From Macrostomum lignano (Eukaryota): a DNA stretch of 64,000 nt. The DNA is taken from NCBI GenBank assembly GCA_002269645.1, contig NIVC01001033.1, positions 1 through 64,000 of the forward strand, given 5' to 3'. This document shows positions 4,622-58,830 of this stretch, piece after piece. Position 1 is the first letter of the stretch, and the number at the start of each line of letters is the position of its first letter. The notes beneath the pieces are model-generated. The model had not been told where the DNA came from, made no database searches, and saw only the letters and a list, made by a program, of their open reading frames with translations. The position numbers were made by a program, and so were the translations under genes.

Positions 4622-7600
4622 TCACTGACTCTTGTTAACCGACTCTTGCAGCCGTTCGTCGTCGCGCAGGACTCGAACCCAGGCGGTCAGCTGAGCAGCT
4701 CGCAGTCTAGCCCAAACAGAGTGCTCAGTAACGCCTGTAGCCAAGATCTGCGCAGCAGCCAGGGCGGCAGCATTAGCGCCAAGCACTGTGACGCAGCCAA
4801 GGCCGGATGGCATTCGCAGAGACGAGCCCAGATCCCAGCCAGCCCAGTCTGCGCTAACTGGTGGAGCGTTAATCACCGGAGCGCACAGGTTGCCGCTGAG
4901 CACGGGGCCAAGGCCGTTGGATCGGCCAGCCACGGCTATGACAGCTGTTGGGCCTCTAGCCGGGTCCGAGGCCAGGGCGCCAACCTCCAGAGCAAATCGG
5001 GTAGCTTTGTGAGCTGAGCAGACTCGAATGTCCACCTGTCATGATGTTTGAGGGGGCATTGTGTTGATTAATGAGTTGGGTGAATGGGACACCAGGACCT
5101 GAAGGAACCAGAGACAATGGACATCAGCATCTGAAGTAACCCCAAGACAAAGAATATCAGCACCTGAAGGGACCCAAGACAATGGACATCAGCACCCGAA
5201 GGAACCCCAAGACAATAGACATCGGCACCTGAAAGAACCCCAACACAATGGACATCAGCACCTGAAGGAAACTCAAGACAATAGACATCAGCACCTGAAG
5301 GAACCCTAAGACAATAGACATCAGCACCTGAAGGAACCCTAAGACAATAGACATCAGCACCTGAAGGCCCCTAAGACAATAGACATCAGCACCTGAAGGA
5401 ACCCCAAGACAAAGGATATCAGCACCTGAAGGACCCAAGACAATGGACATCAGCACCTGAAGGAACCCAACCGACATAAGCACGGTAGCTACAAACCTGC
5501 TCCACTCCCAGTTTGCGCAGCTCGGCAGCAATGCTCTTGCAATAGTCAGCATCAGTGGCCGATCCCATAGCAATAATGACGCGACCCTTTGGCGAACTCA
5601 ATACGGCTGGCAATTTGTCGGCAACCCATTGGAAATTGCGCAGCACAGCGCGGAGTCCGTCGTCGGTGACTTCGGCCATGTCACGGTAGACCTGCTTGTC
5701 AACCATTAGGCGCTTGTCGCCGCCAGGCCAGAGTCGCCAAGAGTCGCTGTCAATCACGTCAGCGAGTAGTATTTCGCCTGTTTCGGCATCAACGCCGTAT
5801 TCAACCTGCGAATTAAGGGGGGATGGAGGCGTCAGACTCTCGCGCTAGGACCCCTGATTTGAGTCTGTGCGCGGCCTCACCCAAAAATACAGGCAGTACT
5901 AATTAGATGACGAGGCATTTAGCCCTAATATTACAGTTAAAGTTACTCCTGCCGTTTACCTAAAGTCTGCAGATTCTATTTGTTGCTTGCAAAACCTAGA
6001 CAGTGTGCTCAGAAGGAAGGCAGCATCACGGGACGGGTCTTCATACAGTATTTTTAATCACTGTCAGAAGAGGGAGCCCGTGTTTTGTCATCATTGCCAC
6101 AAATAGCTATATTAATATAATCGCCGTGATTTGTAGAAATAAAAGAATTTTTAGCACCATTTTTTTCGCTCAGAAGGAAGGCAGCATCACGGGACGGGTC
6201 TTCATGCAGTTTTTGTTAAAACTGTCAGAAGAGGGAGCCCGTGTCTTGTCATCACCGCAATTACTGGTGCTTAAAATATTCACGACGCATAAAGTGTCAG
6301 TTTGCTGGGTAATGCTGCACAGTCACTTATTTATCTAGACATTGCACAGCGACCATTGCAAACATTACTGCATTGTAAGCTGATGCAGAAACATAGCATA
6401 ACTGAACCCGTCATCATTTGGATACAGACAGAGCTCAGCTTCACCAATAACAGCCAAGAACATAACGATGCTTTGCTCAAATCGACAGGCGATGAGATTC
6501 TCGAAAAATATTAGGCCATAACACAAATAATTCAAACTACGATTTACGCATAGTTAAGCTGCAAATTTTTAAATCAACACCTGATTCGCTCAGAAGGAAG
6601 GCAGCATCACGGGACGGGTCTTCATACAGTTTTTTATAACTGTCAGAAGAGGGAGCCCGTGTCTTGTCATCACCGCAAGCAAGGTGTTAAGATTGTTTTA
6701 TGCCAGCAATGACGTCAAGTAAACACATTTCCTCTCAGCAGCCGTAAGTTAAGCAGATTCGGCGATGGTTAGTATGCATTTTAACTAAATTAATCTGTCA
6801 TATTAACAAGAACTCTGGATATTTTAAGACTGCTTTGTCATAATAAACACCTTATTTATGCTCAGAAGGAAGGCAGCATCACGGGACAGGTCTTCATGCA
6901 GTTTTTGTTAAAACTGTCCGAAGAGGGAGCCCGTGTCTTGTCATCACCGCAAATAATGGTGCTTAAAAGATTTATGAAGTGTCAGTTTGCTGGGTAATGC
7001 TGCACAGTCACCTATTCATCTAGACATTGCACAGCGACCATTGCAAACATAAAGCTACATTTATTGTAGGCTGATGCAAATTTATTGCCTAACTGAACCT
7101 GTCAATATTAAAAGTAAATACAGATTTCAGCTTCACCAATACAGCCAAATAAATAGAACAATATTTGATTTTAGTTATTGGCATTAAAGCGGTTAAAATA
7201 CAATTGTAGCAATACCTTTTTTGCTCAGAAGCAAGGCAGCATCACGGGACGGGTCTTCATACAGTTTTTTATAACTGTCAGAAGAGGGAGACCGGGTTTT
7301 GTCATCACCGCAAAGCAGACCCGTTGGAAAAGTTATGCACCTGCAGAGGCATAAAAGGTGAGCGAGGTGCACAAAAGAGGCACCTTAGTGGCCTATTTCG
7401 TGCATGTTTTGGAAATGCACCTGAGTGCACCTTTTAGGCCTAAATGTCACCAATATTTTTTGAAAAGAGGCATGAAAGGTGTAAAATCGGTGAAGTGGTC
7501 AGGCAGTAGGTGAATTCTCAATTTTGATTGGTTGCGGCGGTAGGGGCAGTAAAGGTGCGTAAGGGGCACTGGAGGTGCGCAAAAGGTGAACAGCAGGCTC

Positions 7601-10600
7601 ACAAGTGAGGCACAGCAGGTGTAGGAAAGGTGCTGAAGGGGCGCAGAAAGTGCACGAAAGGTGAATTAGAGGTGCATAAGGTGTACATGTGCGGCGTAAA
7701 TATGTATACAGGTGCATTTCCAAAACACGCTCGAAATATACCCCTAAAGTGCCTCTTCTGTGCACCTCGCTCACGTTTTATGCCTATGCACGAATTAACG
7801 CATTAAGAATTCGTAACAAAAAATTAACTGAGAGTTACATACTCGTACATTGCACGCACAGATCGAACATAGAAAAGCTTTATTTACACCTATACTAATC
7901 GCTGCTATCCCCTTCCTGATCCTGACAAACCACGAAACTAAACATTTCCTATACTGATAAGTTTTAATAAATTTCAACTCAGGAAAAGTTCCGAAAAGTG
8001 ATGAAAAGGTTTGCATTAGTGAGGAAAAATTTCGAATAGTGAGAAAAGGTAGCAAAGAACTTCGCCATTTACAACTTTAACGCCCCTTGCATTGCCTCTA
8101 CGCCTAAAGTGCCCACTGTGCACCTTTTATTCACCTTTCGTGCCTCCAGTGCACACTGTACACTTTTTATGCACCTCTACCGCAGCGCACTTTTTTTCAC
8201 CTTTCACTCCACCAATGCCCCCAATTCCTACTTTGTTCACCTTTTGTGCCTCAACGCACACTGTGCACCTTTAATGCACCTAAATCCCCTACGACACCTG
8301 TGCCCCTACCGCCTATTTCGTGCCTTAAATTCACCTTCTGACCCTGCAGAGGCACTCAGGTGAACAAAAGGTGCACAAGTGGCACAAAATAGGCATAAGA
8401 GAGGCGAAAGTCAGGCAGAAGGTGCAAAACTCTTCACCTTTCATGCCTACTTTAAAAACTCAAAATCCAACGGGAGATGCTAAAGTTGTTGAGCACCTGT
8501 TTGACAATAATTAGTCAAATTTGACATTCGATATTAAATAGGTTAACACCTTTATGCTCAGAAGGAAGGCAGCATCACGGGACGGGTCTTCATACAGTTT
8601 TAGATTAGAACTGTCAGAAGAGGGAGCCCGTGTCTTGTCATCACTGCTTAATGTGTTATAAAAGCGTTTCTTTTGAATTCGCAGTTTATCAATCTGTCAG
8701 TTTGCTGGGTAATGCTACACAGTCACATATTTAGACACCTGCACAGCGACCATTGCAAACGTAAGTAACATCTATTGTAGGCTGATGCAAATTTATTGCC
8801 TAACTGAATTTGTCATAAATTAGTTAAAAGACAGAGTTCAGCTTCACCAATACAGCCAAATAAAGTTTCTTTTAGGTTTTCAATCTTGCGCTTATATTAG
8901 ATCGGACCAGATATGCTTGACAAAGAATAACAAACACCCATATTTGCTCAGAAGGAAGGCAGCATCACGGGACAGGTCTTCATGCAGTTTTTGTTAAAAC
9001 TGTCCGAAGAGGGAGCCCGTGTCTTGTCATCACCGCAAATAATGGTGCTTAAAAGATTTATGAAGTGTCAGTTTGCTGGGTAATGCTGCACAGTCACCTA
9101 TTCATCTAGACATTGCACAGCGACCATTGCAAACATAAAGCTACATTTATTGTAGGCTGATGCAAATTTATTGCCTAACTGAACCTGTCAATATTAAAAG
9201 TAAATACAGAGTTCAGCTTCACCAATACAGCCAAATAACTAGAACAATATATGATATTAGTTTTTTTGGCATTAAAGCGGTTAAAATACAATTGTAGCAA
9301 TACCTTTTTTGCTCAGAAGGAAGGCAGCATCACGGGACGGGTCTTCATGCAGTTTTAGATTATAACTGTCAGAAGAGGGAGCCCGTGTTTTGTCATCACC
9401 GCAAATAAAGGTGCTTAAAGATCTAGATAGATAAAATGTCTGTTTGCTGGGTAATGCTGCACAGTTACTCAATATTCAGACATTGCACAACGACCATTGC
9501 AAACACAAGTGATTAATGTAAGGCTGGTGCAGAATTATTGCATAACTAAACCTGTCATAATTTAATAAAAGACACAGTTCAGCTTCACCAATACAGCCAG
9601 GATGCCAGCTAGCACCAGTGAAAAAGTATAAAAAAGTACACAACATCGCTACTTTAAATATTAGCTTACAGAAGTTGCAACACTCTGCAAAGACTCTCAT
9701 GTTTATAGAATCTTAAGCATAAGAAAGCAGGGTTGTAATCTTTGTGGTTAGAGCGTCGGGCTCGCGACTGGAAGGTTGGGGGTTCGATTCTCGACCCACT
9801 CGGAACAATTTGTGTCCCAGAACAAGACACTTAATTCTGCATTGCTTCACTTCACCCCCCAGCCAGTCCTTGGACTGAACAGCCGTACGCAGCCTTCAGA
9901 TGCGCCGCGCAATAGCTTCGGATGAGCTGTCAGTTGCACACCTGGCCATTATGGCAGGTGCAATACATTATTATAAGAAAATGAGAATAAGCATTATTCC
10001 TTACCTTCATATCAATGAGCGCGCAGTCCAACGAATGCCAAGCTCGCTCGAGAATTTCAAACACAGCCGCGGTGGTGCCCTGCAAAATGTCCACATCGTT
10101 GCCAGTAATCTTGCGACTGCCGCAATTCAGGCCCATAGCAACAATTTGCTCTTTGGACACCTGCGGATCGTCGTTAGCGTCGTCTTTAAAGAAGGTCTCG
10201 GATTTAACTGGCACAAACCGGTGGCCCTCGGGCACGCCGGGGTGGCGCTTCAGAAACGAGCCGGTGGCGACGCGGCGGCACACGAATTCGATTGGGATCA
10301 TGTGACAGCGGCGGGACAGCAGGCAAATGTCGTCAAGGATTCGTTCGAATGCGCACCTGAATTAGATAAAGATTCAAGATAGATAAAGAAAGCGGTCCAG
10401 TGCAACCAACCCCCAAGACACAGTGAAGTGTACATGCCTAACGATAATTAAAGTTAAGGCCACTGTAAACTCCCGCGTGAGTGTGTGCCTGTGTATGTAT
10501 CCGCGCGCTTGTGTGCCTGCTCAGGGGAGTCGACGGATCCCTCTCGCCGGTTGTGCGACAATGTCGCTTAGAGTGCGTGCCTGGGCGCACACAACCTCTG

Positions 10601-12174: not shown

Positions 12175-13630
12175 TTATCTGATTGTCAGGAAAGTTCTTT
12201 TATATTCTGGAACATTCAATGTAATGTGCATATAAATAGTAGTGTAGTGTGCATAAAAAACTACAATAGATAAAACACATTCTTTGCTTGACTTGATCTG
12301 AAATGGTAAAAGATACTCTATTCTCAAAAGACCTGCTAGCATATGCTGCTTCTCATGATTATCACTCTGGCAAGAATGCAAGCCAATTGGCCACTGAAAT
12401 CAATGCTATATTTGGTGCAGGAACCCTCACCTATCAGACTGCCAACAATTGGTTCAGGCGATTCAAAGATGGAGATAAGGGCCTCAAAGACAAGCCCTGC
12501 AGTGGCTGGCCAACAGAGCTCAACAACGATGCACTTGAGCAACTGCTTTAGTGGGACACCTGGCAGACTATGCATGAGCTGGCCATGCAGCTGGGTGTAT
12601 ATCACTCCACTGTTGCTGACCACCTTTACCATCTGAACAAAAAGCCAAAGCTGGGATATTGGGTGCCCCACCAGCTGACTGCCACTGACATGGACTGGCA
12701 CATTGAGGCTGGCCTCACCATGCTCTCCCAATCCTGCCATCCAGATTGGCTAGATGATGTAGTAAATGGTGCCTCTATGTCAACTACTGATGCAAGTGAC
12801 AATGGGTTGATTCTGATGCAAAGCCAGAGTGAGAGGCCAAGGCTGAACTGTACCCCAAAAAGGTCATGCTTTTAGTCTTCTGGGACATGAAAGGAACAGT
12901 GTTGCCACTTGGTATTGACTTTAAAGTTTCCTCCACAAGAAAAAAACTTTCCTCCAAAATTTCTCGCTTTGAAATGGATGTTTTGGTGCTTTTTTATTAG
13001 CTGAGCAGTCTATTTTGGCAGTCTTTGCCTGACTGTTTCTAGATTTTTTCCTAAAAAGTTCTAATTCACTTAAGAAAAAAGTTGCATTTTTTGCTAGGCA
13101 CTTGCACCTAATTTTACTTAAAGCCATTTTGGTAGGACTATATATTACATTTATAAATTATGTTTCAATGATAGATCCCCAAAATGCAAATGAATACAGT
13201 TAAGGTTTTTGAACCTCAGACTATTTTAGTACAGCCTAAAAAAGAGGTAAGTACATACAATTACAATATTGACTGAATAGAATAGCAAGCCTAATTGAAA
13301 CATTAAAAAAGTACAATGATAAATTTTATTACAAGATTTTGCAGAAGATTGAAAATTTTAACAAGAGCAGACAAGAAACTTACGATTTCCTCTGAAATTC
13401 ATAAAATTCTTTGAAGGAAATTCACACTTGATAAAATTTCTTCCAGCCCTCAAATTTTCCCCAATTTCCTTGTAGAGGAAATTTCCTCTGAAGTGGCAAC
13501 ACTGGAAAGGAATCATAATGTGGGAGCTTCTGCCAAAGAACAAGAGCATCAATGCTGCTTTCTACTAGGAGCAGCTTGAGCACCTGCAGCAAAAGCTGGC
13601 TGAGGTACACCCTGAACATTTTGAGAGACA
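12175..13630 (+). mobile_element. Degenerate mariner (Tc1/mariner) transposase remnant, split by a hAT MITE
   Basis: NWFRRFKDGDKGLKDKPCSGWPT, ELAMQLGVYHSTV, KLGYWVPHQLT, HPKKVML..FWDMKG | IIMWELLPKNKSINAAFY*EQLEHLQQKL; stops and frameshifts. Confidence 0.9.
12897..13504. mobile_element. 608-bp hAT-type MITE inserted in the mariner transposase
   Basis: 12-bp TIR CAGTGTTGCCAC / GTGGCAACACTG and perfect 8-bp TSD GAAAGGAA (12889-12896 and 13505-13512); removing it restores WDMKGII. Confidence 0.9.
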
Positions 13631-24359: not shown

Positions 24360-24610
24360 CCAGATCCTCAGGTGCTGGGCCAGCCTCCCAGATCCCCAGT
24401 TGCTGGGCCACCAGCCTCCCAGATCCCCAGTTGCTGGGCCACCAGCCTCCCAGATCCTCAGTTGCTGGGCCAGCCTCCCAGATCCTCAGTTGCTGGGCCA
24501 GCCTCCCAGATCCTCAGTTGCTGGGCCAGCCTCCCAGATCCTCAGTTGCTGGGCCAGCCTCCCAGATCCTCAGTTGCTGGGTCACTAGCGTCCCAGATTC
24601 TCAGTTGCTG
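24360..24610. repeat. 27/31-bp minisatellite, reverse complement of the 962-1392 array
   Basis: GCTGGGCC(ACC)AGCCTCCCAGATCCTCAGTT units. Confidence 0.92.
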
Positions 24611-25044
24611 GTCCTGCCTCACTTTAGCTTCTCAAATGGCATTCTCAAATGACTATGCGAGACAAATAAATGTATACAAAATCTGTGTCAATATCCTCAC
24701 AGCGAACCTGTTTTACTCGCAAATAAGTTATTCTGTTCTGTCTGAAAGCCTGTTGTGCCTACATTTAACCCTCGTGTACTTGTGACAAAAAAATAGCATT
24801 GCACCCATCGCTGTTCTGTGTCATTCAAGCCATCAGCTTATAATTGGTTTTTAATGCACATATTGATTGTTGATCGCAATCCAAGTTACTCTTATTTTTG
24901 CTTTGCGAAAGCATAAACAAATATATTGCTGAGCAAAAGCTTTCACTTGTGATTCTTGTTGGTCACCTAAACATAGATTCTTTTGCTTGGACTTTGATTT
25001 TACGGTTAATTTTGTAACTCAGTAATTCTGCAAATTCTCAGTGG

Positions 25045-50749: not shown

Positions 50750-51528
50750 CCTCACTCCCTGCACCCATTTGCACCCACCTCACTCCCTGCACCCACCTCA
50801 CTCCCTGAACCCACCTCACTCCCTGCACCCACCTCACTCCCTGCACCCATTTGCACCCACCTCACTCCCTGCACCCACCTCACTCCCTGAACCCACCTCA
50901 CTCCCTGCACCCACCTCACTCCCTGCACCCACCTCATTCCCTGAACCCACCTCACTCCCTGCACCCACCTCACTCCCTGAACCCACCTCACTCCCTGCAC
51001 CCACCTCACTCCCTGCACCCACCTCACTCCCTGAACCCACCTCACTCCCTGCACCCACCTCACTCCCTGAACCCACCTCACTCCCTGCACCCACCTCACT
51101 CCCTGAACCCACCTCACTCCCTGCACCCACCTCACTCCCTGAACCCACCTCACTCCCTGCACCCACCTCACTCCCTGAACCCACCTCACTCCCTGCACCC
51201 ACCCAACTCCCTGCACCCATTTGCACCCACCTCACTCCCTGCATCCACCTCACTCCCTGCACCCACCTCACTCCCTGCACCCACCCCACTCCCTGCACCC
51301 ATTTGCACTCACCTCACTCCCTGCACCCATTTGCACCCACCTCACTCCCTGCACCTACCTCACTCCCTGCACCCACCCCACTCCCTGCACCCACTTCACT
51401 CCCTGCACCCATTTGCACTCACCTCACTCCCTGCACCTACCTCACTCCCTGCACCCACCTCACTCCCTGCACTCACCTCACTCCCTGCACCCACCTCACT
51501 CCCTGCACCCACCTCACTCCTTGTACCC
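50750..51528. repeat. 18-bp minisatellite, C-rich on + strand (CACCCACCTCACTCCCTG)
   Basis: Reverse complement of the 52434-56100 array. Confidence 0.95.
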
Positions 51529-52211
51529 AAACTACCCCTTATCCTTCCTCACTGGAGCGTCAACTCTCTCAATTTTAACTTTTCAACAAGCAATCAATCG
51601 TATGCCTAGCTTACATATTAACCTAAAGCTTTAATTTTAGCATGTAAATGTAGGCAAAGATCCCTATTGCGTCATCTGTTGGATGCATAGAAAAATATTG
51701 ATAATAAAACATCCTTAGAAGATTTACCTCATTTAGCTTTTTCAATGCACAGTGCAGTAAAAATTCAGTTTAAACCGTTTATTTCATTACTTCTGTATAC
51801 TCTCATATGCAGTATTGTATAATATATTAACATTGTTATTAGTTACAATTTGTAATTTCGAAAAAAAAATGATTTATGATAATCTATATTTATCTCGAAT
51901 GCCAGCGCAACTACTAGTATTCCATTTTATCATTAATCAACAACATATACAAGCATATAAAATGTAAGTAGGGATCGCTAGATCTTCTGCTTTACCAGTC
52001 TATGACGATGAAACTAAGTGCTATAACAAAGGGGTCCCCACCCTTAAAGACAGTTAGACATTTAGTATATGTGGATTATATTGCAATGCATACATGTAGC
52101 AATAATAATTTATTGTCTCGTTCAATAATGTTTATCGAAATTGTAATTCTCGTACTGAATAAAAGCAGACGATTTTCTAACGATTCATCTTCGATCCTTA
52201 TACAGCAGGTA

Positions 52212-58830
<6,619 letters not shown>

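What the first reader, a model, noticed from the sequence alone, without database searches (positions are those of the whole stretch)
5806..10004. Polycistronic snoRNA array (8 box C/D + 5 box H/ACA) inside one PAICS intron
Seen: a 90-nt unit with boxes C, D', C' and D occurs 8 times and a 165-nt two-hairpin H/ACA unit 5 times, mostly alternating, all on the PAICS sense strand and separated by divergent AT-rich spacers. Established: vertebrate intronic snoRNAs are almost always one per intron and released by debranching and trimming; several per intron needs endonucleolytic cleavage, as in plant and yeast polycistrons and some Drosophila H/ACA clusters. Inference: a mixed C/D-H/ACA intronic polycistron amplified by tandem duplication, coupling rRNA modification to a de novo purine synthesis gene. 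I do not recall PAICS as a snoRNA host.
Basis: partly seen in the sequence, partly recalled or inferred. Interest (0 to 1): 0.85.

Follow-up and report, generated by a model that had tools for sequence, protein, structure and literature searches.

The report
Flatworm intronic snoRNA gene array
One intron of the purine-synthesis gene PAICS in the flatworm Macrostomum lignano carries a tandem array of eight copies of a methylation-guide small nucleolar RNA and five copies of a probable pseudouridine-guide RNA; it is real and unannotated, but this kind of gene arrangement is already known from flies, rice and other organisms.

Summary
The window is Macrostomum lignano contig NIVC01001033.1. Its PAICS gene lies on the minus strand, and its third intron (5806-10004) holds 8 copies of a ~90-nt box C/D unit and 5 copies of a ~167-nt two-hairpin H/ACA-like unit, all in the sense orientation.

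The C/D unit is convincing. It has boxes C, D', C' and D and two 13-bp antisense elements. In 11 of 11 eukaryotic rDNAs these place the methylated nucleotide on 18S G and A residues 32 nt apart, which matches human Gm436 (the SNORD100 site) and Am468.

Each C/D copy is also bracketed by copy-specific inverted repeats.

The H/ACA unit has hairpin-hinge-hairpin-tail form, an ANANNA box in 4 of 5 copies, a conserved ACA, and a 3' pocket 16 nt from the ACA. It has no Rfam relative, no compensatory pairs, and no secure target.

Unit cores are 83-91% alike between copies, while spacers are at random level (about 57%).

Two paralogous PAICS loci carry the same array, one of them with 9 C/D copies.

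Expression and processing were not tested. Intronic snoRNA clusters and mixed clusters are already known in Drosophila, rice, plants in general and trypanosomatids, so this is a new member of a known kind.

The parts
5806..10004 (-). PAICS intron that hosts the array. It lies between the codons for ...LIDMK and VEYGVD...
   Evidence: GT at 10004 and AG at 5806 on the minus strand. The spliced protein is 100% identical over 100% of its length to M. lignano PAICS P0001. The window is locus L003, contig NIVC01001033.1.
10005..10385 (-). Upstream PAICS exon (SAICAR synthetase part). The 5' limit is approximate.
   Evidence: Translation; Pfam PF01259 and PF00731 on the whole protein.
5494..5805 (-). 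Downstream PAICS exon. The 3' limit is approximate.
   Evidence: Translation; protein match.
9432..9598 (-). H/ACA-like unit HA_E (first in the transcript). Hinge box ACAUUA.
9309..9404 (-). C/D unit CD8. All boxes and both guides are canonical.
   Evidence: External stem z = -2.8.
9061..9232 (-). H/ACA-like unit HA_D. Hinge box ACAAUA. It is 99% identical to HA_B.
8944..9038 (-). C/D unit CD7. D' box is CGGA; both guides are intact.
   Evidence: External stem -21.2 kcal/mol, z = -5.4.
8690..8857 (-). H/ACA-like unit HA_C. Hinge box ACAAUA.
8554..8649 (-). C/D unit CD6. Canonical.
   Evidence: External stem z = -2.4; it is clearer in the L001 copy.
7321..8474 (.). Foldback, MITE-like insertion that splits the array. 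Ends are CCCGTTGGA...TCCAACGGG, with internal inverted and direct sub-repeats. It is not part of the snoRNA units.
   Evidence: Sequence; inverted repeats. Present in all three PAICS loci at 99.4-99.8% identity.
7221..7313 (-). C/D unit CD5. In this contig both guides carry a change (D guide CCUUGCUU, D' guide CCGGUCUCCC), so it is probably impaired. In L001 the D guide is canonical.
6975..7146 (-). H/ACA-like unit HA_B.
6858..6952 (-). C/D unit CD4. D' box is CGGA; both guides are intact.
   Evidence: External stem z = -4.0.
6586..6678 (-). C/D unit CD3. Canonical.
   Evidence: fold z = -4.6. External stem z = -3.7.
6290..6455 (-). H/ACA-like unit HA_A. The hinge box ACAAUG departs from ANANNA.
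6166..6260 (-). C/D unit CD2. Canonical.
   Evidence: External stem z = -4.1.
6005..6099 (-). C/D unit CD1 (box C is AUGAUGA). Boxes and guides are canonical. Its 3' flank is that of the ninth copy present in paralogue L001, so it is a recombinant unit and has lost its external stem.
   Evidence: (z = +0.5).

Best explanation
This is a genuine polycistronic snoRNA gene array inside one intron of the Macrostomum lignano PAICS gene.

The ~90-nt unit is a double-guide box C/D snoRNA.
- Its D' antisense element pairs 13 bp with 18S ...GAGAG*GGAGCCUG.
- Its D antisense element pairs 13 bp with 18S ...AAGGA*AGGCAGCA.
- It should therefore direct fibrillarin to 2'-O-methylate the counterparts of human 18S G436 and A468.

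The ~167-nt unit is most likely a box H/ACA snoRNA. Its 3' hairpin carries the constrained pocket, and its target is unknown.

Inferred steps, not shown:
1. The array is transcribed as part of the PAICS pre-mRNA.
2. On each C/D unit, the flanking copy-specific inverted repeats form an external stem. This brings box C and box D together for snoRNP assembly.
3. The AU-rich spacers are cut endonucleolytically. The external stems are the most likely entry points, for example for an RNase III-type enzyme. A cut there would also release the 3' end of the H/ACA unit that lies about 25 nt upstream.
4. Exonucleases then trim each piece back to the bound proteins.

The array grew by tandem and segmental duplication of an H/ACA-C/D dimer and of single C/D units. 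It still changes by unequal crossing-over: the three paralogous loci carry 9, 8 and 8 C/D copies. A few copies are decaying.
For: Host gene and strand.

C/D unit:
- Box C (RUGAUGA) and box D (CUGA) are invariant in 8 of 8 copies, and the conserved block ends sharply at the terminal GC...GC.
- All 8 copies give weak but consistent Rfam matches: snoU83 (RF01179), with the 3' element CUGCCUUCCUUCUGA aligned base for base, and SNORD100.
- In 11 of 11 complete eukaryotic rDNA units the D' guide forms 13 bp (2 G-U) and the D guide 13 Watson-Crick bp with 18S. The fifth-nucleotide rule then falls on a G and an A 32 nt apart.
- That spacing equals 468-436. SNORD100 guides human 18S G436 (PMC12288042), and A468 is a mapped human methylation site (PMC6124571).
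- The published SNORD100 primer contains the same GGCTCCCTCT core.
- The unit folds better than shuffled sequence: z = -4.6, -2.6 and -2.5 for three copies.

Conservation:
- C/D cores have median identity 0.91 and H/ACA cores 0.83. Flanks score 0.53-0.58, against 0.57 for random sequence.
- Between paralogous loci L001 and L003, mismatches are 0.9% in C/D units and 1.2% in H/ACA units, against 5.3% in spacers. That spacer figure is partly inflated by misalignment near L001's extra C/D copy, and the foldback insertion is equally conserved (0.6%), so this comparison is only modest support.

External stems:
- Flank duplexes are more stable than shuffles in 6 of 8 window copies (z = -2.4 to -5.4).
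- The stem sequences differ between copies (AAGCACC/GGUGCU, AACACC/GGUGUU, UAGCUA/UAGCUA, CAGACAGUG/CACUGUCUG).
- Cognate 5' and 3' flanks pair better than non-cognate ones: -16.6 against -11.0 kcal/mol, reached by 1 of 20,000 permutations.

H/ACA unit:
- The consensus fold is hairpin-hinge-hairpin-tail. ACAAUA or ACAUUA follows hairpin 1 in 4 of 5 copies, and ACA is invariant, with conservation ending about 3 nt after it.
- The stems and pocket of the 3' hairpin are invariant apart from two transitions that keep pairing. Its apical loop and the hinge vary. The pocket lies 16 nt from the ACA.

No conserved upstream motif precedes the units. All lie on the host's sense strand.
Against: There is no expression data. 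No RNA ends, no snoRNP association and no modification map of M. lignano rRNA were available.

No Rfam family reaches its gathering score: 20-25 bits against thresholds of 50 and 58.

The rRNA used for target tests came from unidentified eukaryotes in metagenomes, not from M. lignano.

H/ACA unit:
- No Rfam hit, even in a 206-nt search.
- 0 compensatory pairs.
- MFE z = -0.41.
- The 5' hairpin pocket is 23 nt from the H box, and its 3' strand varies between copies.
- Target candidates are weak or non-canonical.

Some copies carry damaging changes: CD5 in both guides, CD4 and CD7 in the D' box, HA_A in the H box.

The foldback insertion is as conserved between paralogous loci as the snoRNA units. 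Low divergence between loci is therefore not by itself evidence of selection.
Confidence: 0.75

Rival explanations
1. The 167-nt unit is not an H/ACA snoRNA. It would be a structured, co-amplified part of the repeat, such as a processing or spacer element or another orphan RNA, that happens to have two hairpins and ACA-type motifs. Only the C/D units would then be functional genes.
For: No Rfam match at any threshold. No compensatory base pairs. Folding energy is no better than shuffles. The 5' pocket is non-canonical. No canonical conserved rRNA target of 12 bp or more was found. One copy has a broken H box.
Against: The units are 83% conserved while the 5' flanks are at random level. The pattern of constraint is what an H/ACA guide predicts: stems, pocket and ACA are invariant, while loops and hinge vary. 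The H box sits directly after hairpin 1, and the ACA-to-pocket distance is 16 nt.
Confidence: 0.22
2. The array is real but is not made from the PAICS intron. It would be transcribed from its own promoter or promoters inside the intron, as an independent polycistronic snoRNA gene nested in PAICS.
For: About 400 nt of unassigned sequence lies between the 5' splice site and the first unit. Independent and clustered snoRNA genes exist in nematodes, ciliates, plants and trypanosomatids (PMC3273799, PMC2780460). Nothing here measures transcription.
Against: No shared upstream element precedes the units. H/ACA-to-C/D spacers are only 22-40 nt. All units are on the host's sense strand. The arrangement is kept in three paralogous PAICS loci.
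Confidence: 0.12
3. The array is a decaying, functionless tandem repeat seeded by a snoRNA gene. The functional genes would lie elsewhere in the genome.
For: The window and genome are extremely rich in tandem repeats. Copy number differs between loci. Several copies have box or guide defects.
Against: Cores are conserved while spacers have randomised. Boxes and 13-nt guides are intact in most copies, including the ninth copy in L001. Copy-specific compensatory external stems are hard to explain without selection on the RNA.
Confidence: 0.08

Closest known systems
Intronic snoRNA gene clusters of Drosophila melanogaster (Huang et al. 2004, 2005) and rice (cited in PMC2780460 and PMC5932544)
   Same: Several snoRNA genes, often isoforms produced by local duplication, sit in a single intron on the host's sense strand. 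Spacers must therefore be cut to release the snoRNAs.
   Different: The Drosophila clusters are described mainly for H/ACA snoRNAs, and H/ACA genes next to C/D genes are called uncommon there (PMC5932544). Here H/ACA-C/D dimers alternate. The host is a purine-synthesis enzyme gene and the organism is a flatworm.
Mixed, reiterated C/D + H/ACA clusters of trypanosomatids and polycistronic clusters of plants (PMC2780460)
   Same: Both snoRNA classes are interleaved, repeated in tandem and separated by short AU-rich spacers. Release needs endonucleolytic processing.
   Different: Those clusters are mostly independent transcription units or non-coding hosts, not an intron of a protein-coding gene in an animal.
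Human SNORD100 (18S Gm436) and the guide of 18S Am468; Rfam RF00609 and RF01179
   Same: The antisense cores are the same (GGCUCCCUCU and CUGCCUUCCUU), and the predicted target nucleotides are the same.
   Different: In Rfam these two antisense elements belong to separate families. Here one RNA carries both. Scores are far below gathering thresholds, so homology is not established, only equivalence of guide function.
External-stem-dependent box C/D snoRNAs (mammalian intronic examples, yeast, trypanosomatids, Tetrahymena; PMC3273799, PMC4150776); Rnt1p-dependent release of yeast U18 from its intron (my recollection)
   Same: Sequences outside the mature RNA pair to bring boxes C and D together.
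   Different: Here the stems are 8-20 bp, copy-specific and present on nearly every member of a tandem array. Whether they are cleaved was not tested.

Membership tests
Box C/D snoRNA | Box C (RUGAUGA) near the 5' end and box D (CUGA) near the 3' end | tested here: met
   GUGAUGA or AUGAUGA and CUGA are invariant in 8 of 8 copies.
Box C/D snoRNA | Terminal or external stem that brings boxes C and D together | tested here: met
   A 4-5 bp terminal stem was found in 5 of 8 copies by a simple scan. External stems are significant in 6 of 8 copies and co-vary.
Box C/D snoRNA | Internal D' and C' boxes | tested here: met
   D' is CUGA in 6 of 8 copies and CGGA in 2. C' is AUGAAGA (one departure from UGAUGA). 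A 5-6 bp stem joins D' and C'.
Box C/D snoRNA | Antisense element of at least 10 nt ending next to D or D', placing a target nucleotide opposite the fifth position | tested here: met
   Two 13-bp duplexes with 18S in 11 of 11 rDNA units. The targets are 32 nt apart, as for human G436 and A468.
Box C/D snoRNA | Stable ~90-nt RNA bound by fibrillarin, Nop56, Nop58 and Snu13; target actually methylated | not testable with these tools
   No RNA or modification data for M. lignano were available.
Rfam SNORD100 (RF00609) / snoU83 (RF01179) | Score at or above the family's gathering threshold | tested here: not met
   17.5-25.5 bits against thresholds of 58 and 50.
Box H/ACA snoRNA | Hairpin-hinge-hairpin-tail fold | tested here: met
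   Both the RNAalifold consensus and the single-sequence MFE give two hairpins. However, energy z = -0.41 and there are no compensatory pairs.
Box H/ACA snoRNA | H box ANANNA in the hinge, and ACA 3 nt from the 3' end | tested here: inconclusive
   ACAAUA or ACAUUA in 4 of 5 copies and ACAAUG in one. ACA is invariant and conservation stops about 3 nt after it. The true 3' end is unknown.
Box H/ACA snoRNA | Pseudouridylation pocket whose top lies 14-16 nt upstream of H or ACA | tested here: inconclusive
   The 3' hairpin measures 16 nt (met). The 5' hairpin measures 23 nt (not met).
Box H/ACA snoRNA | Bipartite complementarity that positions a U in rRNA or snRNA | tested here: inconclusive
   The best canonical site is 18S yUAGU-UC-yGACCAU (4-5 + 7 bp), present only in metazoan-like 18S and not a known human pseudouridine by my numbering. 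One 15-bp match has a 7-nt gap, and 4% of shuffled arms do as well.
Intronic snoRNA gene cluster | Two or more snoRNA genes within one intron, on the host's sense strand | tested here: met
   13 units lie in intron 5806-10004, all on the minus strand.
Intronic snoRNA gene cluster | snoRNAs are produced from the host pre-mRNA | not testable with these tools
   No transcript data.
RNase III (Rnt1p-type) processed polycistronic snoRNA precursor | Double-stranded cleavage signal in the spacers, and dependence on the enzyme | not tested
   Suitable stems of 8-20 bp flank each C/D unit. Cleavage and enzyme dependence are unknown.

The most novel reading that the evidence does not exclude
The copy-specific external stems would be cleavage sites for an RNase III-type endonuclease. 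That enzyme would dice the PAICS intron into H/ACA and C/D precursors independently of lariat debranching. This is a yeast- or plant-style polycistronic pathway operating on an intron of an animal protein-coding gene. In this reading the H/ACA-C/D dimer, with its ~25-nt linker, is the processing unit.
Probability: 0.25. Interest if true: 0.6.

Novelty: new member of a known kind. Interest (0 to 1): 0.4.

Why it matters
My literature search found no paper that describes snoRNA genes of Macrostomum lignano. Homology tools do not see these units at normal thresholds.

The locus gives a first view of how a flatworm organises and amplifies snoRNA genes. It provides a testable double guide for two conserved 18S methylations. 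It also offers a natural series of 8-9 paralogous units whose flanking stems co-vary, which is convenient material for asking how several snoRNAs are released from one intron in an animal.

It does not overturn any rule. Intronic and mixed snoRNA clusters are already documented outside vertebrates.

Tried and rejected
- **Rfam.** At gathering thresholds, over the whole window, there were no hits. In E-value mode over the whole window there was nothing at E <= 1. On the 4.8-kb region only weak C/D hits appeared. On a single H/ACA unit there were only spurious hits.
- **Orthologous introns in related species.** The next-best PAICS proteins are only about 56% identical, and none of the named ones is a flatworm. 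Only the three M. lignano paralogous or allelic loci could be compared. They are 99% alike across the array, which is too close for covariation inside the units.
- **H/ACA target search on 11-120 metagenomic rDNA units.**
  - I first thought the canonical hit at GUAGU-U-C matched human pseudouridines 1045/1046, the SNORA57 sites (PMC8763049, PMC6984369).
  - I re-counted the human 18S numbering against known sites (1031, 1056, 1081, 1136, 1174, 1177, 1232-1248). That places 1045/1046 in GGAGGUUCG, and my hit at about U1073.
  - I therefore dropped that identification.
  - The 15-bp match to 18S UGGGUGGU...GGCCGUU has a 7-nt gap and is matched by 4% of shuffled arms.
  - A one-mismatch search gave 18S CUGGUUAAU-UC-CGAUAACGA, which is also not a known site.
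- **Other snoRNAs in the intron.** A scan for further C/D candidates on either strand found none.
- **tRNA-like stretch at about 9730-9830.** Neither ARAGORN nor Rfam confirmed it.
- **Searches not run.** I judged a protein-style search for the array in other species pointless. The protein collection shows no Logan-derived copies even of M. lignano PAICS.

Full report
**Observation**

The region 5806-10004 contains two repeat families.
- Eight copies of a ~90-nt unit lie at about 6005-6099, 6166-6260, 6586-6678, 6858-6952, 7221-7313, 8554-8649, 8944-9038 and 9309-9404.
- Five copies of a ~167-nt unit lie at about 6290-6455, 6975-7146, 8690-8857, 9061-9232 and 9432-9598.
- No further copy lies elsewhere in the 64-kb window.
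- Tandem Repeats Finder sees the 3' part as a 375-nt period.
- One 300-nt block (C/D plus H/ACA plus spacer) is duplicated at 99% identity.

Unit cores are far better conserved than what surrounds them.
- C/D cores have a median pairwise identity of 0.91 and H/ACA cores 0.83.
- The 60-nt flanks score 0.53-0.58, which equals the 0.57 obtained for random sequence of spacer composition.
- Spacers are 28% G+C, against 50% for C/D units and 39% for H/ACA units.

**Host and organism**

The flanking minus-strand reading frames are PAICS exons. Joined across GT (10004) and AG (5806), they give a 427-aa protein that matches Macrostomum lignano BOX15_Mlig010991 at 100% identity and 100% coverage, with Pfam SAICAR_synt and AIRC domains.

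The window is the reverse complement of contig NIVC01001033.1 of assembly GCA_002269645.1 (locus L003). Two further PAICS loci of the same assembly (L001, L002) carry the same array at 99-99.6% identity. L001 has nine C/D copies instead of eight.

The organism is a free-living flatworm, so the vertebrate "one snoRNA per intron" rule is not the relevant baseline.

**The C/D unit**

In the alignment of the eight copies the conserved block runs exactly from GC(G/A)(G/A)UGAUGA to CUGAGC. Boxes C and D are invariant. D' is CUGA in six copies and CGGA in CD4 and CD7. A C'-like AUGAAGA follows a 5-6 bp stem that joins D' to C'. The unit folds better than shuffled sequence, with z = -4.6, -2.6 and -2.5 for three copies.

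Rfam gives nothing at gathering thresholds. In E-value mode all eight copies match snoU83 (RF01179, 20.6-25.5 bits), with the 3' element CUGCCUUCCUUCUGA aligned base for base. Most also match SNORD100.

I fetched eukaryotic rDNA units from metagenome contigs and tested the guides.
- In 11 of 11 complete units the D' element forms 13 bp (2 G-U) with GAGAG*GGAGCCUG.
- In the same units the D element forms 13 Watson-Crick bp with AAGGA*AGGCAGCA.
- The fifth-nucleotide rule marks a G and an A exactly 32 nt apart.
- That is the spacing of human 18S G436, the SNORD100 target (PMC12288042), and A468, a mapped methylation site (PMC6124571).
- The published SNORD100 primer contains the same GGCTCCCTCT core.

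The unit is thus a double guide for two conserved 18S methylations. In Rfam those two antisense elements belong to separate families.

Five window copies are canonical throughout. CD4 and CD7 have an altered D' box. CD5 has one change in each guide in this contig, although the D guide is canonical in L001.

**External stems (new here)**

The 32 nt upstream of box C and the 32 nt downstream of box D of each copy are complementary to one another.
- Duplex energies beat shuffles in 6 of 8 copies (z = -2.4 to -5.4).
- The paired sequences differ between copies: AAGCACC/GGUGCU in CD2, AACACC/GGUGUU in CD3 and CD6, G-U intermediates in CD4 and CD7, UAGCUA/UAGCUA in L001's CD1, and CAGACAGUG/CACUGUCUG in L001's ninth copy.
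- In L001, cognate flank pairs average -16.6 kcal/mol against -11.0 for non-cognate pairs. Only 1 of 20,000 permutations reaches the cognate mean.
- This covariation argues for selection on the precursor RNA structure.

The one window copy without a stem, CD1, has the 5' flank of L001's CD1 and the 3' flank of L001's ninth copy. The 8-copy loci therefore appear to derive from a 9-copy state by unequal crossing-over between two C/D units.

External stems are known to support accumulation or processing of C/D snoRNAs that have short terminal stems (PMC3273799, PMC4150776).

**The H/ACA-like unit**

Evidence for an H/ACA identity:
- Both the RNAalifold consensus and the single-sequence fold give two hairpins joined by a hinge.
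- The hinge starts with ACAAUA or ACAUUA in four copies and ACAAUG in HA_A.
- An invariant ACA follows, and conservation stops about 3 nt after it.
- In the 3' hairpin, the 6-bp lower stem, the pocket strands (AAUGGUC and AUUACCCA) and the 8-bp upper stem are invariant, apart from two transitions that keep pairing. The apical loop varies.
- The pocket top is 16 nt from the ACA.

Evidence against:
- No compensatory pair.
- Energy z = -0.41.
- No Rfam match, even in a 206-nt search.
- The 5' pocket is 23 nt from the H box, and its 3' strand varies between copies.

Target searches gave nothing secure.
- The best canonical site is 18S yUAGU-UC-yGACCAU (11-12 bp). It occurs only in metazoan-like 18S variants.
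- By my own numbering of human 18S (recalled sequence, checked against a dozen known modified positions) this is about U1073, not the SNORA57 sites 1045/1046 (PMC8763049, PMC6984369). I withdrew that identification.
- A 15-bp two-arm match to 18S UGGGUGGU-7 nt-GGCCGUU is non-canonical, and 4% of shuffled arms do as well.
- I put the probability that the unit is a true H/ACA snoRNA at about 0.75. For now it is an orphan.

**Architecture and mechanism**

Along the pre-mRNA the order is HA_E-CD8, HA_D-CD7, HA_C-CD6, foldback insertion, CD5, HA_B-CD4, CD3, HA_A-CD2, CD1.
- H/ACA-to-C/D linkers are 22-40 nt and contain the 5' arm of the C/D external stem.
- No shared upstream motif precedes the units.

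The most economical model is as follows.
1. The array is co-transcribed with PAICS.
2. snoRNPs assemble on each unit, aided for the C/D units by the external stems.
3. The AU-rich spacers or the stems are cut endonucleolytically.
4. Exonucleases trim the pieces to the snoRNP boundaries.

The anatomy, the guide-target fits and the stem covariation are shown. Transcription from the host promoter, the cuts and the enzyme are inferred.

**Comparison and novelty**

[quoted passage not shown] Plants and trypanosomatids have polycistronic clusters that mix C/D and H/ACA genes (PMC2780460).
- In Drosophila, H/ACA genes flanking C/D genes are called uncommon (PMC5932544).
- I found no paper on M. lignano snoRNAs.
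- The locus is therefore a new, unannotated member of a known kind of gene organisation.
- It has two features of moderate interest: alternating H/ACA-C/D dimers amplified inside an intron of an animal enzyme gene, and co-varying external stems on almost every C/D copy.
- A functional link between purine synthesis and rRNA modification is not supported by anything beyond co-location.

**Limits**

- There are no RNA or modification data.
- The rRNA used for target tests is from unidentified eukaryotes, not from M. lignano.
- Only near-identical paralogous loci were available for comparison.
- The rest of the M. lignano genome could not be searched for further copies.

Noticed in passing
window 7321-8474: A 1.15-kb foldback, MITE-like element with 9-bp terminal inverted repeats (CCCGTTGGA...TCCAACGGG) and many internal AAAGGTGCAC-type inverted and direct sub-repeats. 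It is inserted between CD5 and CD6 and is present in all three PAICS loci at 99.4-99.8% identity.
   Followed up: partly
L001 14988-15075, compared with window 6005-6099: Paralogue L001 carries a ninth, fully canonical C/D copy. The window's CD1 looks like the product of unequal crossing-over between L001's CD1 and that ninth copy, and it has lost its external stem.
   Followed up: yes
window 9730-9830 (+): A stretch that looks tRNA-like by eye (GGTTCGATTCTCG, a B-box-like motif), antisense to PAICS and inside the same intron. It may be a SINE remnant. ARAGORN and Rfam do not recognise it.
   Followed up: partly
window 5087-5468: A 33-nt minisatellite (about 11.7 copies) fills the next PAICS intron and creates a spurious repetitive open reading frame.
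   Followed up: no
window 12303-12551 (+): An open reading frame with a Mos1-type HTH_48 transposase domain (E = 4.9e-12). It is a mariner-like transposon remnant upstream of PAICS.
   Followed up: partly
window 50770-51529 and 52437-56103; also 954-1395 and 24360-24620: The window is packed with minisatellites (40 rows at score 200 or more). Two pairs of arrays have units that are reverse complements of each other: TGCACCCACCTCACTCCC against GGGAGTGAAGTGGGTGCA (the latter with 204 copies), and the 28-31-nt GGTGGCCCAGCAACTGAGGATCTGGGAGGCT unit against its complement. These are inverted satellite arrays.
   Followed up: no
window C/D units, e.g. 6584-6682 (-): Within each C/D unit, the parts of the two guide regions that do not pair with 18S (CACGGG and CCCGUG) are complementary to each other. 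This gives a rod-like fold with z down to -4.6. Whether it matters for assembly or guide presentation is unknown.
   Followed up: no
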